A stretch of 64,000 nt of DNA from NCBI GenBank assembly GCA_024704765.1, contig JAKMXF010000022.1, forward strand, positions 511,055 to 575,054, in the 5' to 3' direction. The DNA is from Oopsacas minuta. Lineage: Eukaryota; Animalia; Porifera. Under the pieces are notes generated by a model. The model worked only from the letters and a program-made list of their open reading frames with translations, ran no database searches and had not been told where the DNA came from. The position numbers and the translations under genes were made by a program. This document shows positions 8,362 to 16,052 of this stretch, piece by piece (within the stretch, counting starts at the first letter, position 1; each line of letters begins with the position of its first letter).

Positions 8362-10620
8362 CTATTTCTCGATGAATTCATTTCTAAACTTAACAAAGTT
8401 ACAATTGAGTAGACTACTCTCTTTTCTGAGTTTCGCTGCATCTTGTTTCAGGACTTCAAGTGCATTTCTCTCTTCATCTAACTCAAATGATTTCTGTTTC
8501 AGTTTAACTACTCCTCCATCAAATTCTCTCAAAAGTCCCTGGATCAATTGATCCAAATCTCTCCTGAATAGGGCACTACAGCCTGACACAAGAGATGGTT
8601 GAATATTGTGTAATTCTCTTTCCAGCCGACTGACTAACTGAGCTCTTAACAATCCTAGTTTCGCTTCTTCATTGAATAATGACCAATCGGCTAAGCCTAG
8701 TGTTGCTAAACCTCCTCCGCTAACAAGGATAAATTTCCAACTAGTCACCTTCTGTACAAGAAAAGTTATAGATAAAGCAGTTGCTATAGTAACGGCAGGA
8801 ATGCTGAGAGGCCCTCTGTATATCATTGAAGAAAATCCTGCAGGGAGGGTTCTAACGACAGAAGAGCATATGGAGAATAAACCAATCCTATTCAAGAAAG
8901 GGGCGAGTCGAACAGGACTTAAAATAAAATGGTATTCCAAGTCAGGTTTGAAATCTTGTAAAAGGTGAGCACAGTCTGGACGCATTTCTGTTTTGAAATT
9001 TACAAATTGCGCGTTTTGCACTGATTCCTGTCCCAGCAAGTCCATAGACATTCTCCTGTCTATAGGAGCGATGATTTTACTGGTGATGTCATGAGTAACT
9101 TTATGGAAAAACTCAGTAAGCTGAGTGGAAGACTCATTGTTGAGTTTCTGAGTCAGCTGATTATCAATGAAGTCAATGAGACCAGTTTGGAAATGTTCAG
9201 CTTGTTCTGAAGAGAAATTTTGTTCAAACCTGTCTGCCAGCTGAGATAAACTGAGGCGTTCTCTGCGGCAGATATCACATACAATATTCCTCGCCTGAAT
9301 TAGAAGAGGACCGGCCTCTCCTTCTTGCACCTGTATCAGTTCCAATCTTCTCTCCTCCATTAGGCGTAAACTTTCGCGACATTCTGTTTGATCTCTCAGG
9401 AGAGCTTTGAGATGGTCTTCAGCTTGTTGCTCAATTTCCCGCATCAGCTGTTCCAAACTATCCACAACCTCTACTCCCTTTTGAATGTGTTTTGAGAACT
9501 TTGTCCTAACAGCTGAAGTACTCAAACATTCCAGAAGTTTCAATTCGAAACGTTCAAACTCAAATTTCCTCTCCACAGCCAGATTATCTACACTTGATAT
9601 CTGTTTAACCGAAGTTCTCCTCTCTACTGCTTCTTTCCCAGACACAAAATAAATTCTCTCTTTAGCAGTAAATAAATCAACTGATTTCAGTTCCTTAACT
9701 AAGAATTCCTGACATCTTTCTATATGTTGATGACGTATCTTAGCAGCTTCTTTAGTAGCAGCTGGCATATCCCATCTATTGTTAAGAACGAATATATTAG
9801 GAGAACTGAGTCTCTCAGCTACTGTAGAGAAGAATCTCTTCTCTGCTCGCATCAATGTAGATTCAGAATTAGCTACTAGTACGAACACATCAGCATCAAG
9901 ACAGTGCTTATCAATCCAATCATCTGTATAGTCATCTATGTCAATTCCAGGACTGTCAACAAGTTCTACGTCATATCTAAGCAGCTCACAATGCTCTTTC
10001 GGCCAGTGTACCCTCACTATACTTCCTGCATCTAGTTTGTCATCTTGTAAGGCATTAACCAGCTGATCTACTGAGGTAAGAGGGAGTTTCTCGCCCTTGT
10101 CACTTGGACCAACCAACTCCATATACCCCTCTCTCTCCTCTGACCCCACTACACTACAGAAACAGCATGTGGTATGTCCAAATCCGCTCGGTAACACTTG
10201 TTCACGTAGCATCGCGTTGATACACGTGCTCTTGCCGTTACTAGTACGTCCGAAAAATACAATCTTCATTTGTCTTCGTGAAATAATATCTTTTATTCCT
10301 GCAGCTTGTGATACCCATTCACTCACAACTTTAGTGTTATCATCCACCAGCTGTATCAACAAGTCTCCTTTGATTTTAGGGTGTCGTCTCTGAGTAGAGA
10401 GGAAGTGCTCTGACTGTTTGAGTGAGTCTATGAGAGTTGAAAATATGTTTAAAGCTTTAGACTTAACTTGAGCAAATCTCTCAAGAGGTCTAGCTTCATG
10501 CAAAGAAGGTAGCATGTGTTCATGAATAGTTATAGATTTTGTGAGAGGGAACACGCCACCCTTGGTTGATGTGGGGCTAGAAAGTGGCAGGGACTGGTCC
10601 AGGAGGTCCATTGAGGCCAT
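8362..10620 (-). CDS. MFN: Mitofusin (Fzo/Marf) dynamin-like GTPase, single exon, ATG at 10620
   Basis: G1 motif FFGRTSNGKSTCINAML, LPSGFGHTTCCF, LVDSPGID, FILNNRWD-type G4 (FVLNNRWD), hydrophobic membrane region and C-terminal coiled coil. Confidence 0.95.
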   Translation of the reverse strand: MASMDLLDQSLPLSSPTSTKGGVFPLTKSITIHEHMLPSLHEARPLERFAQVKSKALNIFSTLIDSLKQSEHFLSTQRRHPKIKGDLLIQLVDDNTKVVSEWVSQAAGIKDIISRRQMKIVFFGRTSNGKSTCINAMLREQVLPSGFGHTTCCFCSVVGSEEREGYMELVGPSDKGEKLPLTSVDQLVNALQDDKLDAGSIVRVHWPKEHCELLRYDVELVDSPGIDIDDYTDDWIDKHCLDADVFVLVANSESTLMRAEKRFFSTVAERLSSPNIFVLNNRWDMPAATKEAAKIRHQHIERCQEFLVKELKSVDLFTAKERIYFVSGKEAVERRTSVKQISSVDNLAVERKFEFERFELKLLECLSTSAVRTKFSKHIQKGVEVVDSLEQLMREIEQQAEDHLKALLRDQTECRESLRLMEERRLELIQVQEGEAGPLLIQARNIVCDICRRERLSLSQLADRFEQNFSSEQAEHFQTGLIDFIDNQLTQKLNNESSTQLTEFFHKVTHDITSKIIAPIDRRMSMDLLGQESVQNAQFVNFKTEMRPDCAHLLQDFKPDLEYHFILSPVRLAPFLNRIGLFSICSSVVRTLPAGFSSMIYRGPLSIPAVTIATALSITFLVQKVTSWKFILVSGGGLATLGLADWSLFNEEAKLGLLRAQLVSRLERELHNIQPSLVSGCSALFRRDLDQLIQGLLREFDGGVVKLKQKSFELDEERNALEVLKQDAAKLRKESSLLNCNFVKFRNEFIEK

Positions 10621-11351
10621 AAGATAAAATGCTAAAGTAAACTTCAAAGTAGAAACAGTAGACAGATAAATTGTCTGAATATATTATTACTTGTATTTAC
10701 GTATGATTAGTACAAACAAAATCATCATAGTGGTAGAGATCTAGGCTTAAACAGATCTGAGCTTACACAGGACGATACATGACGGGAAAATAGATGACTT
10801 GAAATTCATTGTAGAGACAATTAGTGACAAGACAATTATTCGTGTCAGGACAATTGGTTGCAAGTAATATTTGCTTAAATAATATCTACGCAACGGAACA
10901 TACTCCTATATTAGAGATGCGATAGAGCTCCACATCTGCATCTGTGGAAAGGGAAATCTCATTGAAGTCCAATCCCTCATTCAAAAATCAATCAAATTCA
11001 TATTCACCCATTACAGTATTTAGTTTTCTAACAAATTCGAAAGTACATATAAATAAGATGAGTATGTCCTATAATTATTACGATTTCTTAGTTGAATAAT
11101 AGAGAAATGCCACGTAATGGGGAAGACACCGTTTAAGAGTTAAATTGGAGAAATGGCAAACTTTCTCCAATACCTCATCACTTGTATCTACTCTGTATCC
11201 TATATCATATGATAAAATTAATCATGGCAAATATCAATTATAATAATTTATAAGATTGAATTTAATTGTATTCTATAAACTTACGAAGAAATGTTGTTTT
11301 TAGTTTTATTGAAATAGTAAAGCAGAACAGCTTCATAGTAGAAGATTTAAA

Positions 11352-14300
11352 TCACAAATCAGTGCGGATAGAGTCGAGTGACTCATCCAAACTCTGAGAT
11401 TCAATGACGTCACCTTGTAGATTCTTATTCTTAAGATTACCAATCGTAAACGCGTCTGTACAATTGTTAACACCAAGCATTGCCTTCACACGGAACACAA
11501 ACATCTCGAGAGATTTCCTTAACGGCGGTACATAGCGAGTCAGTGAGATATCCTTTAGATTCTTAGAGTGTGTACAATAGTGTTGCAAACACCTAGTCCC
11601 ATGCTGTAATGTCTTGAGAAGACTGGTAACCTCACTGTTCTTTTCTCTGAATACAAAGTCAAGTAGAGGCATTCCTAGTTTGAGGAAAGTATCTATGTAG
11701 AAGCGACTGCATCTGAGTACTGTACTCAAGAATAAGCGATTATCAAATGACTTCACAATGTTAACGAGGATTGAGAATAGCCTCACAGATATTTCTAATT
11801 TGAATAGCCTTTGTAAATGTAATTCCATTGAATCTGAAGGTTGGAAAGGAGGATCTTGTAAAGTTTTCAGATCGTAAACTAACTCAGAGAATATAACTTT
11901 ATAATAAACATATATAGTAGATGTGTTGAGAGTTGGAAATAGTTTTGATCTGTTGTTATCCTCTACCAATAATTCTGGCATAGCATTGCCTGCGAGTTCT
12001 TCAATAGCTAAGAGAGGCGATTCATGGAAATTCACATAAAATTTAACAATATCCTCGAAATGTGAAGGTTTGTTCGTACCATAATGAGGCCATTGGTGTT
12101 TCAATATTTTTCCAAGACTCTCAGAAATAGTTTGCCTTATTCTCGGTTTTTCATGAAGCAGAGATATGTAATAGTATATCTTACAAACAGGCTGTACGAA
12201 TGTAAATATGTTTCCACGGAATAATAGTGAATCGAAGTAATCGATAGCATTTACAATCATCTCATCTCTTCCCAATAAAACTTGATCTGAATTCGATTGG
12301 AAGAAATCAGAAATGTCTTTTAGAATTAAATCAAATTTATCAAGATCTTTGTTGTGGGAAATGAGATGGAAAATCGTCTCTAAACACGAGAATAAGAGAG
12401 AAATAAATTCCATCTCTTCTTGTGTTTGGAAGAAATCATTTTCTGTAGTGTCCATTGAATCAGCAGGTGTCTTATCAACTAGCTCTAGGAAGCAACACAG
12501 ACGTGGAAATATGTCACATACCAATTCAAGTACTTGGTTGTCAGGGGTACTTGTCCTGCCAGAATGGCTACTAAAGCCAAATTGCCTTGAAGGCAGGAAC
12601 TTATCTAGTTTGTGTTTTAAAGCGTAAAATAAGAATGTACATTCTTCTAAATTAATAAGGAGCTTATTCCAAAATTCATCAGAGTTTGTCTGACGGGCTT
12701 CATCCATATTAATTTCAATGTTTATGAGCATTACAGAGTGTAGTGAGAGTTGTTCATAGAGGGGGGTAGGGAGAAAATTAAAGTGTTGCTTGTCAGAACT
12801 AGTTTTAACCTTCTCAATGAAATTATGTTTCTGTTTAATCTTTACAAAATCTATTGGTGTCAACACCTGATCAGCATGTGTAGCAGTTACTGCTTGAAGA
12901 ACAGATTGGGACATATATTTTGGTAGAGAATATAGCTGTGTTGCATATTTATTAAGTAATCTTTCTACTAGAATTAGTTGTGATAAACATTGGTATACAG
13001 GGGATTGAGATCCTGCATCTCTCACTGAAGAGTATACATTTATTAACTCACAAAGCCAGGCAGATAAGATCAACAAACTAGACACGATAATTTGCGAACT
13101 CTCTGCAGAGAACTGATCAGGCTTAGTTAATTCTTCTTGTTGAATGAGTAGGATAGGAGAAGTGAGGAGGTGTTCTATTTCTTGGAGACTGCCATTCAGA
13201 TGTTGACAACATATGGAAACTAACTGTAGCTGTGGTAACAGAGAAAAGAGACTGCGAGAATCTTTTGTACGATCTACCTTATTGATTTGTAGTGCATGTA
13301 CTAATTGTAATAACTTCAAGGCTACAGTAGGCTTGTCTTTCTTCAAACCTAATATCAATTTAGGTTTGAGTTCACCAATCGAGTCAAATCCCTTCTTATT
13401 CAGTTCAATCATAAATTCAGCTACGAATTCTTTTTTCAGTCCAGACATTACCCAACTTAGAAACTTTTCATTTCTTCTAGAAGCGCGCACGATAGTAGCT
13501 AGCTCAGAGTAGAAGAGGGCCAGAGAGGCAGGATGGGAAGAGAGAATTTGTTTCAATTGTAAAATCGGTTTGGTTAATCTTCTCAGCTCAGTATCATTCA
13601 AATCAGTAGAGTATTGTTCTAATAATAAACGAATACCTACTGCCACGCCAACTACACCAACATTCCTAATTGACTCATCTCCGTTACCTAGCAACGAGTT
13701 TACTGACTCATGGAATGTGTCATCGATATATGTTTCATCTGGATTGTCAGAATGCAAAGCTAGATTAGCTGTTAGTTCAAAGAATTTCATAATATTTTTT
13801 TGTGAGAAAGTGTGAAGTTCGGTGTACAGATATTGTAGTTTAGGTACATAAGGTAGGAGAATGTCTTTGTTAGATTCCGCGAGTGAGATGAGGAGAATGA
13901 GAGGAGGCATGGGTTCTTGTTGTGGATCCAAACACAGAGTTTGAAGAATGAAATCTAAAATAGATTGTCTTCCATCAGTTTCTGCTGCTAGAAATAGAGA
14001 CCGCAATAGATTCAGTGTAAAAATGGATTCATTTGTAATAAAAGGGGTCTGAAACAGCGCGAAAAAAGACGCAGAATCTTTAGACACACAGTGTGCTAGA
14101 ATAGAAATATCCTCCAAAATAGTTTCAATAGAAATTCCTTGTTTAAGTTTAGCCTTCAAAGCATTCTGCACTCTAACCTGTACACAACTCATGCTATACA
14201 TTATACATAGTACACATAAATCAACAGCTCTAACTTCTGGACTAGGTGATAGCTCGATATATCGCAGCCAGCTTTCAAATATCAACGGCTGGAATCTTAA

Positions 14301-15230
14301 TACACTCTCTAGTGTGTGGATGATGACTACATTCCTATGCAACCCTCTGGTAGTCATGAATATTTCAGAGCTTCTAACATGTGTAACAACCTCGTCGCTT
14401 TCCTCTTGATTAGATGGATGTAAAATAAACTTTAGTAAATATTCTAAATCATCGCTAGGAACAGATGTAAGCATAGAGAGAGCTGAATCTCTGAATTCCT
14501 CCATCAAATCAGGATTCAGATTAAAATTTGATACGGTGTCAATGATGACAGCTGTCAGTTTGATTTGAGATACTAGATCTTTCAGCTGTTGGGCTACGAA
14601 AATGTGTTCAGAGTCCTCCACTATATCTGGAAGACATAGTACAATCAGACGCTTTAGAGGTAGAGGAGATGAGCTGAGAACCTTCAGAATCTTGGTGGAG
14701 AATTCTCTTGGTTTTGCTAGCTTACTGATCCATCTTAATTGAGAAAGAATCAGATTCGTATTCTCATTGACCTCATCATGCTCTAAAGTTTTAGAGTATT
14801 CCTCCAGTTTAGTGAGTAAGAAAGATAGGATAAATGGTTGGAGACTGAAGATGTCTAATAGGAGGCGTACTAGAGTAGGCTGCCCCATGTTACTGAGAGA
14901 GTATTCAGGAGGTCCCGAATAATCCAAAGGTTCCATCGACGCCTTTAGTCGATCTTCAGTGCCTAAATGATATTCAATTTCTTCTTGCAATGCATCCATG
15001 CTAATTGGTAGTGAAGACAGCTTGAGATTGAATGTACGAGTGAATGTGGAAATATCACAGTTTATATTGTAACTCAATTGAGATATTTTTATACCACAAT
15101 CCTCTAGTAGAATTGCAAAGTTCTCAGCTAGTTCAGTTCTAATAAAATCTCTCGCTTTCTTACGCGTATTCTTCTTGGTTATGCCAGTAGAATTGAGTGA
15201 TTGGTTTGCCTTTCCTTTAGGTTTATACAT
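11352..15230 (-). CDS. FANCD2: Fanconi anemia group D2 protein, single exon, ATG at 15230 (~1292 aa)
   Basis: LILSQLRWI, LPDIVEDSEH, FLKLGMPLLDFVF and the characteristic C-terminus FRVKAMLGVNNCTDAFTIGNLKNKNLQG. Confidence 0.93.
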   Translation of the reverse strand: MYKPKGKANQSLNSTGITKKNTRKKARDFIRTELAENFAILLEDCGIKISQLSYNINCDISTFTRTFNLKLSSLPISMDALQEEIEYHLGTEDRLKASMEPLDYSGPPEYSLSNMGQPTLVRLLLDIFSLQPFILSFLLTKLEEYSKTLEHDEVNENTNLILSQLRWISKLAKPREFSTKILKVLSSSPLPLKRLIVLCLPDIVEDSEHIFVAQQLKDLVSQIKLTAVIIDTVSNFNLNPDLMEEFRDSALSMLTSVPSDDLEYLLKFILHPSNQEESDEVVTHVRSSEIFMTTRGLHRNVVIIHTLESVLRFQPLIFESWLRYIELSPSPEVRAVDLCVLCIMYSMSCVQVRVQNALKAKLKQGISIETILEDISILAHCVSKDSASFFALFQTPFITNESIFTLNLLRSLFLAAETDGRQSILDFILQTLCLDPQQEPMPPLILLISLAESNKDILLPYVPKLQYLYTELHTFSQKNIMKFFELTANLALHSDNPDETYIDDTFHESVNSLLGNGDESIRNVGVVGVAVGIRLLLEQYSTDLNDTELRRLTKPILQLKQILSSHPASLALFYSELATIVRASRRNEKFLSWVMSGLKKEFVAEFMIELNKKGFDSIGELKPKLILGLKKDKPTVALKLLQLVHALQINKVDRTKDSRSLFSLLPQLQLVSICCQHLNGSLQEIEHLLTSPILLIQQEELTKPDQFSAESSQIIVSSLLILSAWLCELINVYSSVRDAGSQSPVYQCLSQLILVERLLNKYATQLYSLPKYMSQSVLQAVTATHADQVLTPIDFVKIKQKHNFIEKVKTSSDKQHFNFLPTPLYEQLSLHSVMLINIEINMDEARQTNSDEFWNKLLINLEECTFLFYALKHKLDKFLPSRQFGFSSHSGRTSTPDNQVLELVCDIFPRLCCFLELVDKTPADSMDTTENDFFQTQEEMEFISLLFSCLETIFHLISHNKDLDKFDLILKDISDFFQSNSDQVLLGRDEMIVNAIDYFDSLLFRGNIFTFVQPVCKIYYYISLLHEKPRIRQTISESLGKILKHQWPHYGTNKPSHFEDIVKFYVNFHESPLLAIEELAGNAMPELLVEDNNRSKLFPTLNTSTIYVYYKVIFSELVYDLKTLQDPPFQPSDSMELHLQRLFKLEISVRLFSILVNIVKSFDNRLFLSTVLRCSRFYIDTFLKLGMPLLDFVFREKNSEVTSLLKTLQHGTRCLQHYCTHSKNLKDISLTRYVPPLRKSLEMFVFRVKAMLGVNNCTDAFTIGNLKNKNLQGDVIESQSLDESLDSIRTDL

Positions 15231-15500
15231 TCTATCCAACAACTAAAACAACTTACAATACTACCATAATTTTAAATAGAATTAATTGAGATCATCAATA
15301 GAGATGGGAGCCTAGACAGTAAGTGGTATGATGCTAAATTTTTTCCCCGTCTTATTTGTGATGAAAATCAATTTGCTGACCACTTTACTAACATAATAAT
15401 GTATGAAATTTCCTTAATAATCGTAGGCAATTTATCTACAAAATCGAAAATAGTTAATTGGTAACAAATCCAAAATTTCAAATGTATGAAAATAAGTGAA

Positions 15501-16052
15501 CTATGACCAGTGGGCATTCACATGGTTAGTTTCAATAATGTCCATGTAAGCATGCGTTTGTAGCCATGTAGAGTCTACTTGTAGTTCAATCAATAAGCTC
15601 TCAGCTATCTCAACTCCCTTCTTTCTAGACTGGTCAGGTTTCATAACTATCTCTAGTTCTAAGAAGTAGCCAATTCCCTCTACTTTATCTAAACGTACGT
15701 GTGTTTGACCGATAAAGTAAAGTAGTCTCTCTTTAGTAACCTCCCCTCTCTGAAGCAATGTTTTAGAAAGAATTTCTTTCATTGAAATAGGGTCTTGAAT
15801 TGGACTTTTTGTGTAGTGACATTGTTTGGATGCAGTATCAGCCGGTTTTTCATAAAATATCAATGTTGCAACACTTCGACCTCTCCCTTGTTGCTCCCTT
15901 AGTTTCAAAATACCTTTTGAAGAGTGGTAGAAAGTGTCACGTTGTAGTACTTGAGTACCCTCAGATTTTGTTTTGCGATTCAAATGTAAACGGACGTGTT
16001 CAAATACCATCAAATTTGGTAACCTTGCTTTTATTTCAATATTATATGGCAT
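15501..16052 (-). CDS. CYTH-domain protein, class IV adenylyl cyclase (CyaB)-like
   Basis: NIEIKAR (ExExK-type motif), QRDTFY, LKLRE, VTKERLLY, LDKVEGIGYFLELE and terminal AYMD motifs. Enzymatic activity cannot be inferred from sequence. Confidence 0.88.
   Translation of the reverse strand: MPYNIEIKARLPNLMVFEHVRLHLNRKTKSEGTQVLQRDTFYHSSKGILKLREQQGRGRSVATLIFYEKPADTASKQCHYTKSPIQDPISMKEILSKTLLQRGEVTKERLLYFIGQTHVRLDKVEGIGYFLELEIVMKPDQSRKKGVEIAESLLIELQVDSTWLQTHAYMDIIETNHVNAHWS

What the first reader, a model, noticed from the sequence alone, without database searches (positions are those of the whole stretch)
13650..13760. FANCD2 lacks the monoubiquitination lysine (K561 equivalent is Ser)
Seen: the segment reads LALHSDNPDETYIDDTFHESVN-S-LLGNGDESIRNVGVVG, with a TCG codon at 13697-13695 (Ser512 from ATG 15230). 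Known: human FANCD2 reads [23 protein letters not shown]561-QLSSTVFKYKLIGIIG, and K561 ubiquitination by FANCL/UBE2T locks the FANCI-FANCD2 clamp. The recalled sequences align without gaps (H, L and GxxG anchors), and no lysine is nearby. Inference: this intact, full-length FANCD2 may act without ubiquitination, possibly with loss of the FA core ligase in this lineage.
Basis: partly seen in the sequence, partly recalled or inferred. Interest (0 to 1): 0.75.

Follow-up and report, generated by a model that had tools for sequence, protein, structure and literature searches.

The report
Glass-sponge FANCD2 without its ubiquitin lysine
The glass sponge Oopsacas minuta and seven close relatives keep an intact FANCD2 DNA-repair gene, but the one lysine that nearly all other organisms use to switch it on with ubiquitin is replaced, and the enzyme that attaches ubiquitin was not detected, so the protein probably works without that switch.

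Summary
Window 11352-15230 (minus strand) is a single 1292-aa ORF and a full-length FANCD2 ortholog (Pfam PF14631, 436 bits). Codon 512 (13697-13695) is TCG, Ser. HMMER aligns it gap-free opposite human K561.

In two alignments of about 140 FANCD2 orthologs, 128-129 of 132-134 non-hexactinellid sequences have Lys there, including the calcareous sponge Sycon. All eight members of the glass-sponge clade have Ser, Thr or Leu, with no conserved Lys nearby. Contigs from a second study show the same codon, so it is not an assembly error. pN/pS is about 0.3.

The genome has one FANCD2, a FANCI that keeps its K523 equivalent (one relative has Ser) and FANCM. No FANCL domain (four Pfam models), FANCE, FANCC, FAAP100 or FAN1 nuclease domain reached threshold. 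This non-detection is suggestive, not proof: a real FANCM domain scored below its cut-off. UBE2T was inconclusive and USP1 untested.

Best reading: a lineage-wide FANCD2-FANCI clamp that does not depend on ubiquitin. The main rival is ubiquitination of FANCI or of a relocated lysine by an unrecognised ligase.

I found no paper and no earlier scan note on this. Hydra vulgaris FANCD2 has Arg at the same site.

The parts
11352..15230 (-). FANCD2 coding sequence: 1292 codons plus the stop, with no intron
   Evidence: It is a single ORF. PF14631 matches at 436 bits, and the match covers model positions 22-1410 of 1418. PDB FANCD2 chains match at E 3e-104. pN/pS against a close relative's contigs is 0.30.
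13695..13697 (-). Codon 512, TCG = Ser, at the position of human FANCD2 K561
   Evidence: The codon is unchanged in contigs of four runs from two studies.
13647..13724 (-). Acceptor-site segment, residues 503-528. The near-universal R-K-Q-L-S core and the basic K-Y-K-R stretch read N-S-L-L-G and S-I-R-N here.
   Evidence: Column counts are. In the other orthologs: R at -1 in 99/134, K in 128/134, Q at +1 in 89, L at +2 in 105, and K/R at +8, +10 and +11. The glass-sponge version is itself nearly invariant within the clade.
13551..13571 (-). K554 and K560: lysines invariant in all 8 glass-sponge-clade sequences and rare in other orthologs (5% Lys). They are candidates if the acceptor site moved.
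   Evidence: Their distance in space from S512 was not testable, because no coordinates were available.
11361..12113 (-). C-terminal domain, residues 1040-1290. It is the best conserved part of the protein.
   Evidence: It is 45-47% identical to amphibian FANCD2 and 74-83% identical within the clade. It is also the strongest stretch in the PDB alignments. That the C-termini of FANCD2 and FANCI form the clamp around DNA is taken from PMC11358013.

Best explanation
This is the single, functional FANCD2 ortholog of the glass sponge Oopsacas minuta. In the lineage leading to this species and its seven sequenced relatives, the canonical monoubiquitin acceptor lysine and the basic motif around it were replaced (R-K-Q-L-S became N-S-L-L-G). 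The rest of the protein, its partner FANCI and FANCM were kept. The likely mechanism, which is inferred, is that FANCD2-FANCI still forms a DNA clamp that slides on duplex DNA and closes at single-strand/double-strand junctions without a ubiquitin lock. Closure would be favoured by DNA binding and by ATR phosphorylation of FANCI's conserved S/TQ cluster. The ubiquitin-specific layer appears to have been dismantled: the FANCL ligase, other core subunits, and FAN1, which carries a ubiquitin-binding domain (from my own knowledge, not checked here). What is shown: orthology, the missing lysine, clade-wide conservation, purifying selection, presence of FANCI and FANCM, and non-detection of FANCL, FANCE, FANCC, FAAP100 and FAN1. 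What is inferred: that no ubiquitin is attached, and how the clamp is regulated.
For: Ser at the K561 column is shown. All 8 clade members lack Lys there and share no nearby Lys. The clade is monophyletic (support 1.0) on a long stem of 1.23 substitutions per site. Sycon (Calcarea), Hydractinia, an ichthyosporean and bilaterians keep Lys. The codon is confirmed in a second study's contigs. pN/pS is 0.30, with 19 synonymous and 19 non-synonymous changes. FANCI is present as an intact 1334-aa ORF with a conserved SQ cluster. One clade member's FANCI has Ser instead of the K523-equivalent Lys, which fits relaxed need for that site. FANCM is present. No FANCL domain was found, nor FANCE (28), FANCC (50), FAAP100 (51) or FAN1 VRR_NUC (32). 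The same pipeline reported UBC-domain fragments down to 24.6 bits. From the literature: unmodified D2-I closes on dsDNA and on ss-dsDNA junctions, and FANCI phosphorylation promotes closure (PMC11358013). Mouse Fancd2 K559R keeps ubiquitination-independent roles in meiosis (PMC9971320).
Against: FANCI keeps Arg-Lys at its acceptor site in 5 of 6 clade members. FANCI-only ubiquitination is enough for a closed clamp in vitro (PMC9890228). The clade has invariant lysines of its own at positions 554 and 560. FANCL absence rests on Pfam scans with no eukaryotic positive control, in a fast-evolving lineage where a real FANCM domain fell below its cut-off. UBE2T was inconclusive and USP1 was not examined. 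No RNA or protein data were available: no RNA run is on record. The sponge relatives are unnamed ENA assemblies, so 'all Hexactinellida' is not established.
Confidence: 0.55

Rival explanations
1. Ubiquitin control persists but has been rewired. The complex would be locked through FANCI K507 alone, or through a relocated FANCD2 lysine such as K554 or K560. The ligase would be a FANCL too diverged for Pfam to detect, or a different E3.
For: FANCI keeps M-R-K-A-L-F opposite human L-R-K523-A-M-F, and 5 of 6 clade members keep the Lys. I(Ub)D2 is a closed clamp on DNA (PMC9890228). K554, K560, K600 and K633 are invariant within the clade and rare elsewhere. A real FANCM domain scored below its Pfam cut-off, so divergent FA domains can be missed. 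The genome encodes many E2 and E3 genes.
Against: None of the four FANCL domain models gave co-located weak hits. The best hits lie in a Deltex-like protein and a coiled-coil protein. At 75-84% identity, keeping the Lys in 5 of 6 sequences is what any residue would show, and one member has Ser. The whole basic recognition motif around the FANCD2 site is gone.
Confidence: 0.3
2. The Ser or Thr that replaced the lysine is itself the regulated residue. It would carry phosphate, or ester-linked ubiquitin, wedged into the FANCD2-FANCI interface in place of lysine-linked ubiquitin.
For: Seven of 8 clade members have Ser or Thr at the site. UBE2J-type E2 genes are present. That UBE2J2 can modify Ser/Thr is my own recollection, not tested here.
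Against: The most divergent member has Leu. No kinase or ligase motif was identified. There is no direct evidence of any kind.
Confidence: 0.05
3. The gene is a decaying relic that lost its function once the ligase was lost.
For: The stem branch is long. pN/pS of 0.30 shows only moderate constraint.
Against: The ORFs of about 1290 codons are intact in 8 species at 59-74% identity. The segment around residue 512 and the C-terminal domain are strongly conserved. The gene order CYTH - FANCD2 - mitofusin is conserved. The partner FANCI is also intact.
Confidence: 0.04
4. It is an artefact: a wrong alignment register or an assembly error at the codon.
For: None found.
Against: Three independent alignments agree. 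The codon is identical in contigs of four runs from two studies. Seven other assemblies show the same loss.
Confidence: 0.01

Closest known systems
Vertebrate FANCD2 (human K561, mouse K559, chicken K563; PDB 6vaa, 7ay1, 6tni, 3s4w)
   Same: It has the same family and length class and aligns end to end. FANCI is present as partner. The C-terminal domain is conserved.
   Different: There is no acceptor lysine, and the R-K-Q-L-S core and nearby basic residues are replaced. No FANCL was detected in the genome. The gene has no intron.
Engineered ubiquitination-dead FANCD2 (mouse K559R, PMC9971320; chicken K563R, PMC11358013)
   Same: The protein cannot take ubiquitin at the canonical site. The mutants keep ubiquitination-independent functions such as synapsis, crossover control and DNA scanning by the unmodified clamp.
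   Different: Here the change is natural, old and fixed in a whole clade. It comes with a remodelled flanking motif and apparent loss of the ligase, so selection has had time to compensate.
Minimal FA monoubiquitination module of flies, worms, Dictyostelium and early-diverging fungi (FANCD2, FANCI, FANCL, UBE2T; PMC11061109)
   Same: It is a reduced FA gene set that retains FANCD2, FANCI and FANCM.
   Different: In those lineages FANCL and the lysine are kept together. Here neither the lysine nor a detectable FANCL remains.
Hydra vulgaris FANCD2 (XP_065673752.1, isoform X6)
   Same: It also lacks the acceptor lysine: I-F-R-N-L-S-S against Hydractinia I-R-K-Q-L-S-S.
   Different: The change is conservative (Lys to Arg) and the L-S-S and K-R-I-G flanks are kept. 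It is an independent event in a cnidarian. Its ligase status is unknown.

Membership tests
FANCD2 protein family (Pfam PF14631) | Full-length match to the family model above the curated cut-off | tested here: met
   436.3 bits against a cut-off of 27. Model positions 22-1410 of 1418 are covered in one open frame.
FANCD2 protein family (Pfam PF14631) | Closest solved structures are FANCD2 chains, aligned over nearly the whole length | tested here: met
   Human, chicken and mouse FANCD2 match at E 3e-104 to 4e-96. The mouse chain aligns residues 107-1282 in one stretch.
FANCD2 protein family (Pfam PF14631) | Single-copy gene; no paralog that could carry the lysine | tested here: met
   All three matches in the 61.5-Mb genome lie in this one ORF.
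FANCD2 protein family (Pfam PF14631) | Partner FANCI encoded in the same genome | tested here: met
   There is a 1334-aa ORF on contig C298. FANCI_S2 scores 128.8 bits. PDB FANCI matches at E 9e-154. NCBI names it FANCI-like [Oopsacas minuta]. Physical binding was not shown: complex prediction gave no verdict.
Canonical FA monoubiquitination module | Acceptor lysine in FANCD2 at the K561 position | tested here: not met
   It is Ser512, and S, T or L in all 8 clade members.
Canonical FA monoubiquitination module | Conserved basic motif around the acceptor (R at -1, Q-L-S after it, K/R at +8 to +11) | tested here: not met
   It reads N-S-L-L-G ... S-I-R-N.
Canonical FA monoubiquitination module | Acceptor lysine in FANCI at the K523 position | tested here: met
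   K507 in M-R-K-A-L-F. It is kept in 5 of 6 clade sequences; P0019 has Ser.
Canonical FA monoubiquitination module | FANCL E3 ligase encoded in the genome | tested here: inconclusive
   It was not detected. FANCL_C scored at best 17.8 bits, in a Deltex-like ORF. d1 scored 15.7 bits in a coiled-coil ORF. d2 scored 15.4 bits. d3 gave nothing. The weak hits are not co-located. The evidence leans towards absence, but there was no eukaryotic positive control and the real FANCM-MHF_bd domain scored only 17.4 bits.
Canonical FA monoubiquitination module | UBE2T, the dedicated E2 | tested here: inconclusive
   There are 48 UBC-domain matches. I read the ORFs of 33 loci by eye (21, 12) and saw none that looked UBE2T-like. 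Nine loci were not read: the eight long fusion ORFs L024-L026, L029, L033-L035 and L039, and L037. The two candidates I checked were UBE2D/E-like and UBE2A-like. The list is not exhaustive: several expected E2 types were not seen either.
Canonical FA monoubiquitination module | USP1 deubiquitinase | not tested
Canonical FA monoubiquitination module | FAN1 (VRR_NUC nuclease) | tested here: inconclusive
   No VRR_NUC match at E <= 0.01 and no first-look candidates. The same caveats apply as for FANCL.
Canonical FA monoubiquitination module | FANCD2 is actually monoubiquitinated after DNA damage | not testable with these tools
   This needs immunoblotting or mass spectrometry on sponge material or recombinant proteins.

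The most novel reading that the evidence does not exclude
The Ser/Thr that replaced the lysine in 7 of 8 glass-sponge-clade FANCD2 proteins is a new regulatory acceptor at the same interface position. It would carry phosphate or ester-linked ubiquitin, so the clamp lock would have been re-invented with different chemistry rather than lost.
Probability: 0.05. Interest if true: 0.85.

Novelty: new variant of a known kind. Interest (0 to 1): 0.62.

Why it matters
Monoubiquitination of FANCD2 at K561 is treated as the central, universally conserved switch of the Fanconi anaemia pathway. In my sample of about 140 orthologs from animals, fungi and protists the lysine is present in about 97%.

A whole animal clade has kept FANCD2, FANCI and FANCM under selection while discarding the lysine and, apparently, the ligase. 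That makes it a natural separation-of-function experiment. It isolates what the FANCD2-FANCI clamp does without ubiquitin, such as DNA scanning, junction recognition, fork protection and meiotic roles. These functions have so far been studied only with engineered K-to-R mutants.

The sponge proteins could be expressed and compared directly with vertebrate ones. The Arg in Hydra hints that the loss may have happened more than once.

Tried and rejected
- **Complex prediction.** I submitted FANCI 150-620 with FANCD2 120-640. The result was no verdict (score 0.00, folded without alignments). This is neither support for nor evidence against binding.
- **MAFFT --auto.** I replaced it with FFT-NS-2 and L-INS-i on the 260-aa segment.
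- **Representative search.** I reran it with residues 93-1292.
- **Weak FANCL hits.** The FANCL_C hit is a WWE-RING-DTC (Deltex-like) protein. The FANCL_d1 hit is a Lys/Glu-rich coiled-coil ORF.
- **UBE2T hunt.** I read the UBC-domain ORFs of 33 loci by eye and ran two PDB checks. No candidate emerged, but the list is incomplete: nine loci were not read, and several expected E2 types were not seen either.
- **Other non-Lys sequences.** Solemya velum is a partial, doubtful gene model. Bifiguratus shows Lys once realigned. The tree neighbours of the sponge clade are Trichinella and Trichuris, which looks like long-branch attraction rather than relationship.
- **Riesgo et al. 2014.** This paper on FA genes in sponge transcriptomes is not held in the library.
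- **RNA evidence.** No RNA run is on record for this stretch.
- **DUF489 Pfam hit.** It is below its cut-off and I disregarded it.
- **Not attempted.** I did not run a structure prediction, because the tool returns no coordinates and so could not place K554 or K560 relative to S512.
- **Operator limits.** No spliced model was needed.
Full report
**What is there.** The minus strand of the window carries one uninterrupted ORF from 15242 to 11352. Its first ATG is at 15230. From that ATG it encodes 1292 residues. Codon 512 is TCG at 13697-13695.

The protein matches Pfam PF14631 (FancD2) at 436 bits, E 3e-130. The match spans model positions 22-1410 of 1418 in a single open frame. Its best matches among solved structures are human, chicken and mouse FANCD2, at E 3e-104 to 4e-96. 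The mouse chain aligns residues 107-1282 in one stretch.

The genome is 61,460,524 bases in 365 contigs. Those figures match the published Oopsacas minuta assembly: 365 scaffolds, about 61 Mb, 36% G+C and 91-93% BUSCO completeness (PMC10280926). The FANCI protein from this genome is identical to NCBI's 'Fanconi anemia group I protein-like [Oopsacas minuta]'. This confirms the organism named in earlier scan notes.

The flanking genes are a CYTH-domain gene (15504-16052) and a mitofusin (8365-10647). The same gene order is found around the closest relative's FANCD2.

**Is Ser512 really at the K561 position?** Three independent alignments agree.

- phmmer against human FANCD2 aligns residues 489-531 to human 538-580 without a gap and with top posterior marks. 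Counting along that alignment puts S512 opposite K561.
- A full-length MAFFT alignment was built from 142 FANCD2 sequences of at least 900 aa, taken from a search of 1.84 billion representative proteins. The column is Lys in 128 of 134 non-hexactinellid sequences.
- An L-INS-i realignment of the 260-residue segment gives Lys in 129 of 132.

After realignment, three non-hexactinellid sequences still lack Lys at the column:

- Hydra vulgaris has Arg.
- A partial Solemya gene model looks unreliable.
- One sequence is missing the region.

The flanks changed as well. Other orthologs have R at -1 (99/134), Q at +1, L at +2, S/T at +3 and K/R at +8, +10 and +11. The sponge reads N-S-L-L-G ... S-I-R-N. 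In O. minuta the nearest lysine is 30 residues upstream and 42 downstream. No nearby lysine is shared by the clade.

**It is not an error and not a one-off.** Contigs of three runs of one sample are identical to the window across the codon. A contig from a different study ('organism B', about 97-98% identical) covers 13519-14020 with eight differences, none at 13695-13697.

Seven further proteins from unnamed ENA eukaryote assemblies are 59-74% identical over the full length. At the site they read S, S, T, S, S, S and L. With O. minuta they form one clade (support 1.0) on a long stem of 1.23 substitutions per site.

The best non-clade hit is FANCD2 of the calcareous sponge Sycon ciliatum, which has Lys. 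So do Hydractinia, an ichthyosporean, molluscs, arthropods and vertebrates. The loss is therefore specific to this glass-sponge clade, and old.

The 38 differences from organism B split 19 synonymous to 19 non-synonymous, giving pN/pS of 0.30. The segment around residue 512 is nearly invariant within the clade. The C-terminal 250 residues are 74-83% identical within the clade and 45-47% identical to amphibian FANCD2. The gene is under purifying selection. It is not a relic.

**The rest of the pathway in this genome.**

- **FANCD2:** one locus only.
- **FANCI:** an intact 1334-aa intronless ORF on contig C298, E 9e-154 to human FANCI.
  - By my count along that alignment, sponge M-R-K507-A-L-F lies opposite human L-R-K523-A-M-F, so FANCI keeps its acceptor lysine.
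  - Five of six clade FANCI sequences keep it. The most divergent (P0019) has Ser.
  - The S/TQ cluster just downstream is conserved in all six. This cluster is the ATR target that promotes clamp closure (PMC11358013).
- **FANCM:** a helicase exon on contig C24 matches PDB FANCM at E 3.6e-50.
- **FANCL:** not detected.
  - The RING-like C domain scored at best 17.8 bits, inside a Deltex-like WWE-RING-DTC protein.
  - Domain 1 scored 15.7 bits, in a coiled-coil ORF.
  - Domain 2 scored 15.4 bits.
  - Domain 3 gave nothing.
  - None of these hits is co-located with another.
- **Others with no candidate:** FANCE, FANCC, FAAP100 and the FAN1 VRR_NUC domain.

**How much these negatives are worth.** The same pipeline reported UBC-domain fragments down to 24.6 bits. 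It also found FANCI and FANCD2 easily.

Several things weaken the negatives:

- There was no eukaryotic positive control for the FANCL models.
- The tool itself warns that no match does not show absence.
- The MHF-binding domain of the real FANCM gene scored only 17.4 bits against a 25-bit cut-off. Short FA-specific domains in this fast-evolving lineage can therefore be missed.

Four adjacent FANCL domains all vanishing without a trace of co-located weak hits is less likely, so I lean towards true loss but do not regard it as proven.

UBE2T is inconclusive. There were 48 UBC-domain matches. I read the ORFs of 33 loci by eye (21, 12) and none looked UBE2T-like. Nine loci were not read: the eight long fusion ORFs L024-L026, L029, L033-L035 and L039, and L037. 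The two candidates I checked were UBE2D/E-like and UBE2A-like. Several expected E2 types were not seen either, so the list is incomplete. USP1 was not examined.

**Mechanism.** What is shown is a conserved FANCD2 without the canonical acceptor, a conserved FANCI, FANCM, and no detectable ligase. What follows is inference from established work.

- Unmodified D2-I slides on DNA. It can close fully around 44-bp duplex DNA and clamps on ss-dsDNA junctions. FANCI phosphorylation by ATR shifts it towards the closed state. Ubiquitin only locks that state (PMC11358013).
- Mouse Fancd2 K559R retains ubiquitination-independent roles in synapsis, crossover control and germ-cell maintenance (PMC9971320).

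I therefore think the glass-sponge complex works as an unlocked, phosphorylation-tuned clamp in fork protection and/or meiosis (confidence 0.55).

The main rival (0.30) is that ubiquitin control persists in a rewired form. FANCI-only ubiquitination yields a closed clamp in vitro (PMC9890228). FANCI keeps its Arg-Lys. The clade also has invariant lysines of its own at positions 554, 560, 600 and 633. That rival needs an E3 that I could not find.

A speculative third reading is that the Ser/Thr at the site, present in 7 of 8 clade members, is itself modified. The Leu in the eighth member argues against it.

**Comparison with what is known.** The protein is a member of the FANCD2 family on every test I could run. 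It does not meet the defining features of the canonical monoubiquitination module: the acceptor lysine and its motif were tested and not met, and FANCL was not detected.

The reduced FA modules described in flies, worms, Dictyostelium and early-diverging fungi always keep FANCL, UBE2T and FANCI together with FANCD2. That survey used the same Pfam accessions I used (PMC11061109). The same paper states that sponges have a relatively complete pathway, which makes the glass-sponge state a departure.

Three full-text searches found no paper on a FANCD2 lacking the lysine in sponges or elsewhere. The O. minuta genome paper does not mention Fanconi genes. The scan's own notes hold nothing on FANCD2, FANCI or FANCL. 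I classify the finding as a new variant of a known kind.

**Limits.**

- The seven relatives are unnamed assemblies. I infer that they are glass sponges only from their similarity, shared gene order and clade membership.
- No expression data were available.
- The complex prediction gave no verdict.

Noticed in passing
P0041 (Hydra vulgaris FANCD2 isoform X6, XP_065673752.1), around residues 480-490: Hydra vulgaris FANCD2 has Arg at the K561 column (I-F-R-N-L-S-S). The hydrozoan Hydractinia has I-R-K-Q-L-S-S. This looks like a second, independent loss of the acceptor lysine in a non-bilaterian animal.
   Followed up: partly
P0019 (FANCI of the most divergent glass-sponge relative), alignment A2: This FANCI has Ser where the other five clade members and other animals have the K523-equivalent lysine (M-R-S-A-L-L, followed by K-K-K-K).
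   Followed up: partly
G000:C318:35602-37958 (loci L015, L018, L021): Three tandem UBE2D/E-like E2 genes all have Ser where the catalytic Cys should be (H-P-N-I-x-S-x-G-x-x-S). They could be inactive E2 variants or Ser-based ones.
   Followed up: no
G000:C24:32356-35064 (L055:5357-8065): The FANCM gene is split into exons. Its helicase exon matches PDB FANCM at E 3.6e-50, but its MHF-binding domain reaches only 17.4 bits, below the Pfam cut-off. This shows how far FA-specific domains have diverged in this lineage.
   Followed up: partly
G000:C111:1212906-1224796 and C19:59669-66169 (L028, L030, L032, L042, L043): Several paralogous proteins join a UBC (E2) domain to a C-terminal U-box-like tail. 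The E2 part is closest to UBE2A among solved structures. An earlier scan note describes the same family.
   Followed up: partly
window 8365-16052 and L001: The gene order CYTH-domain gene, FANCD2, mitofusin is the same in O. minuta and in the closest relative's 1.27-Mb contig.
   Followed up: yes
window 12859-14600: A run from a second study ('organism B') holds contigs 97-98% identical to the window. This is probably another population or a sister species of Oopsacas.
   Followed up: partly
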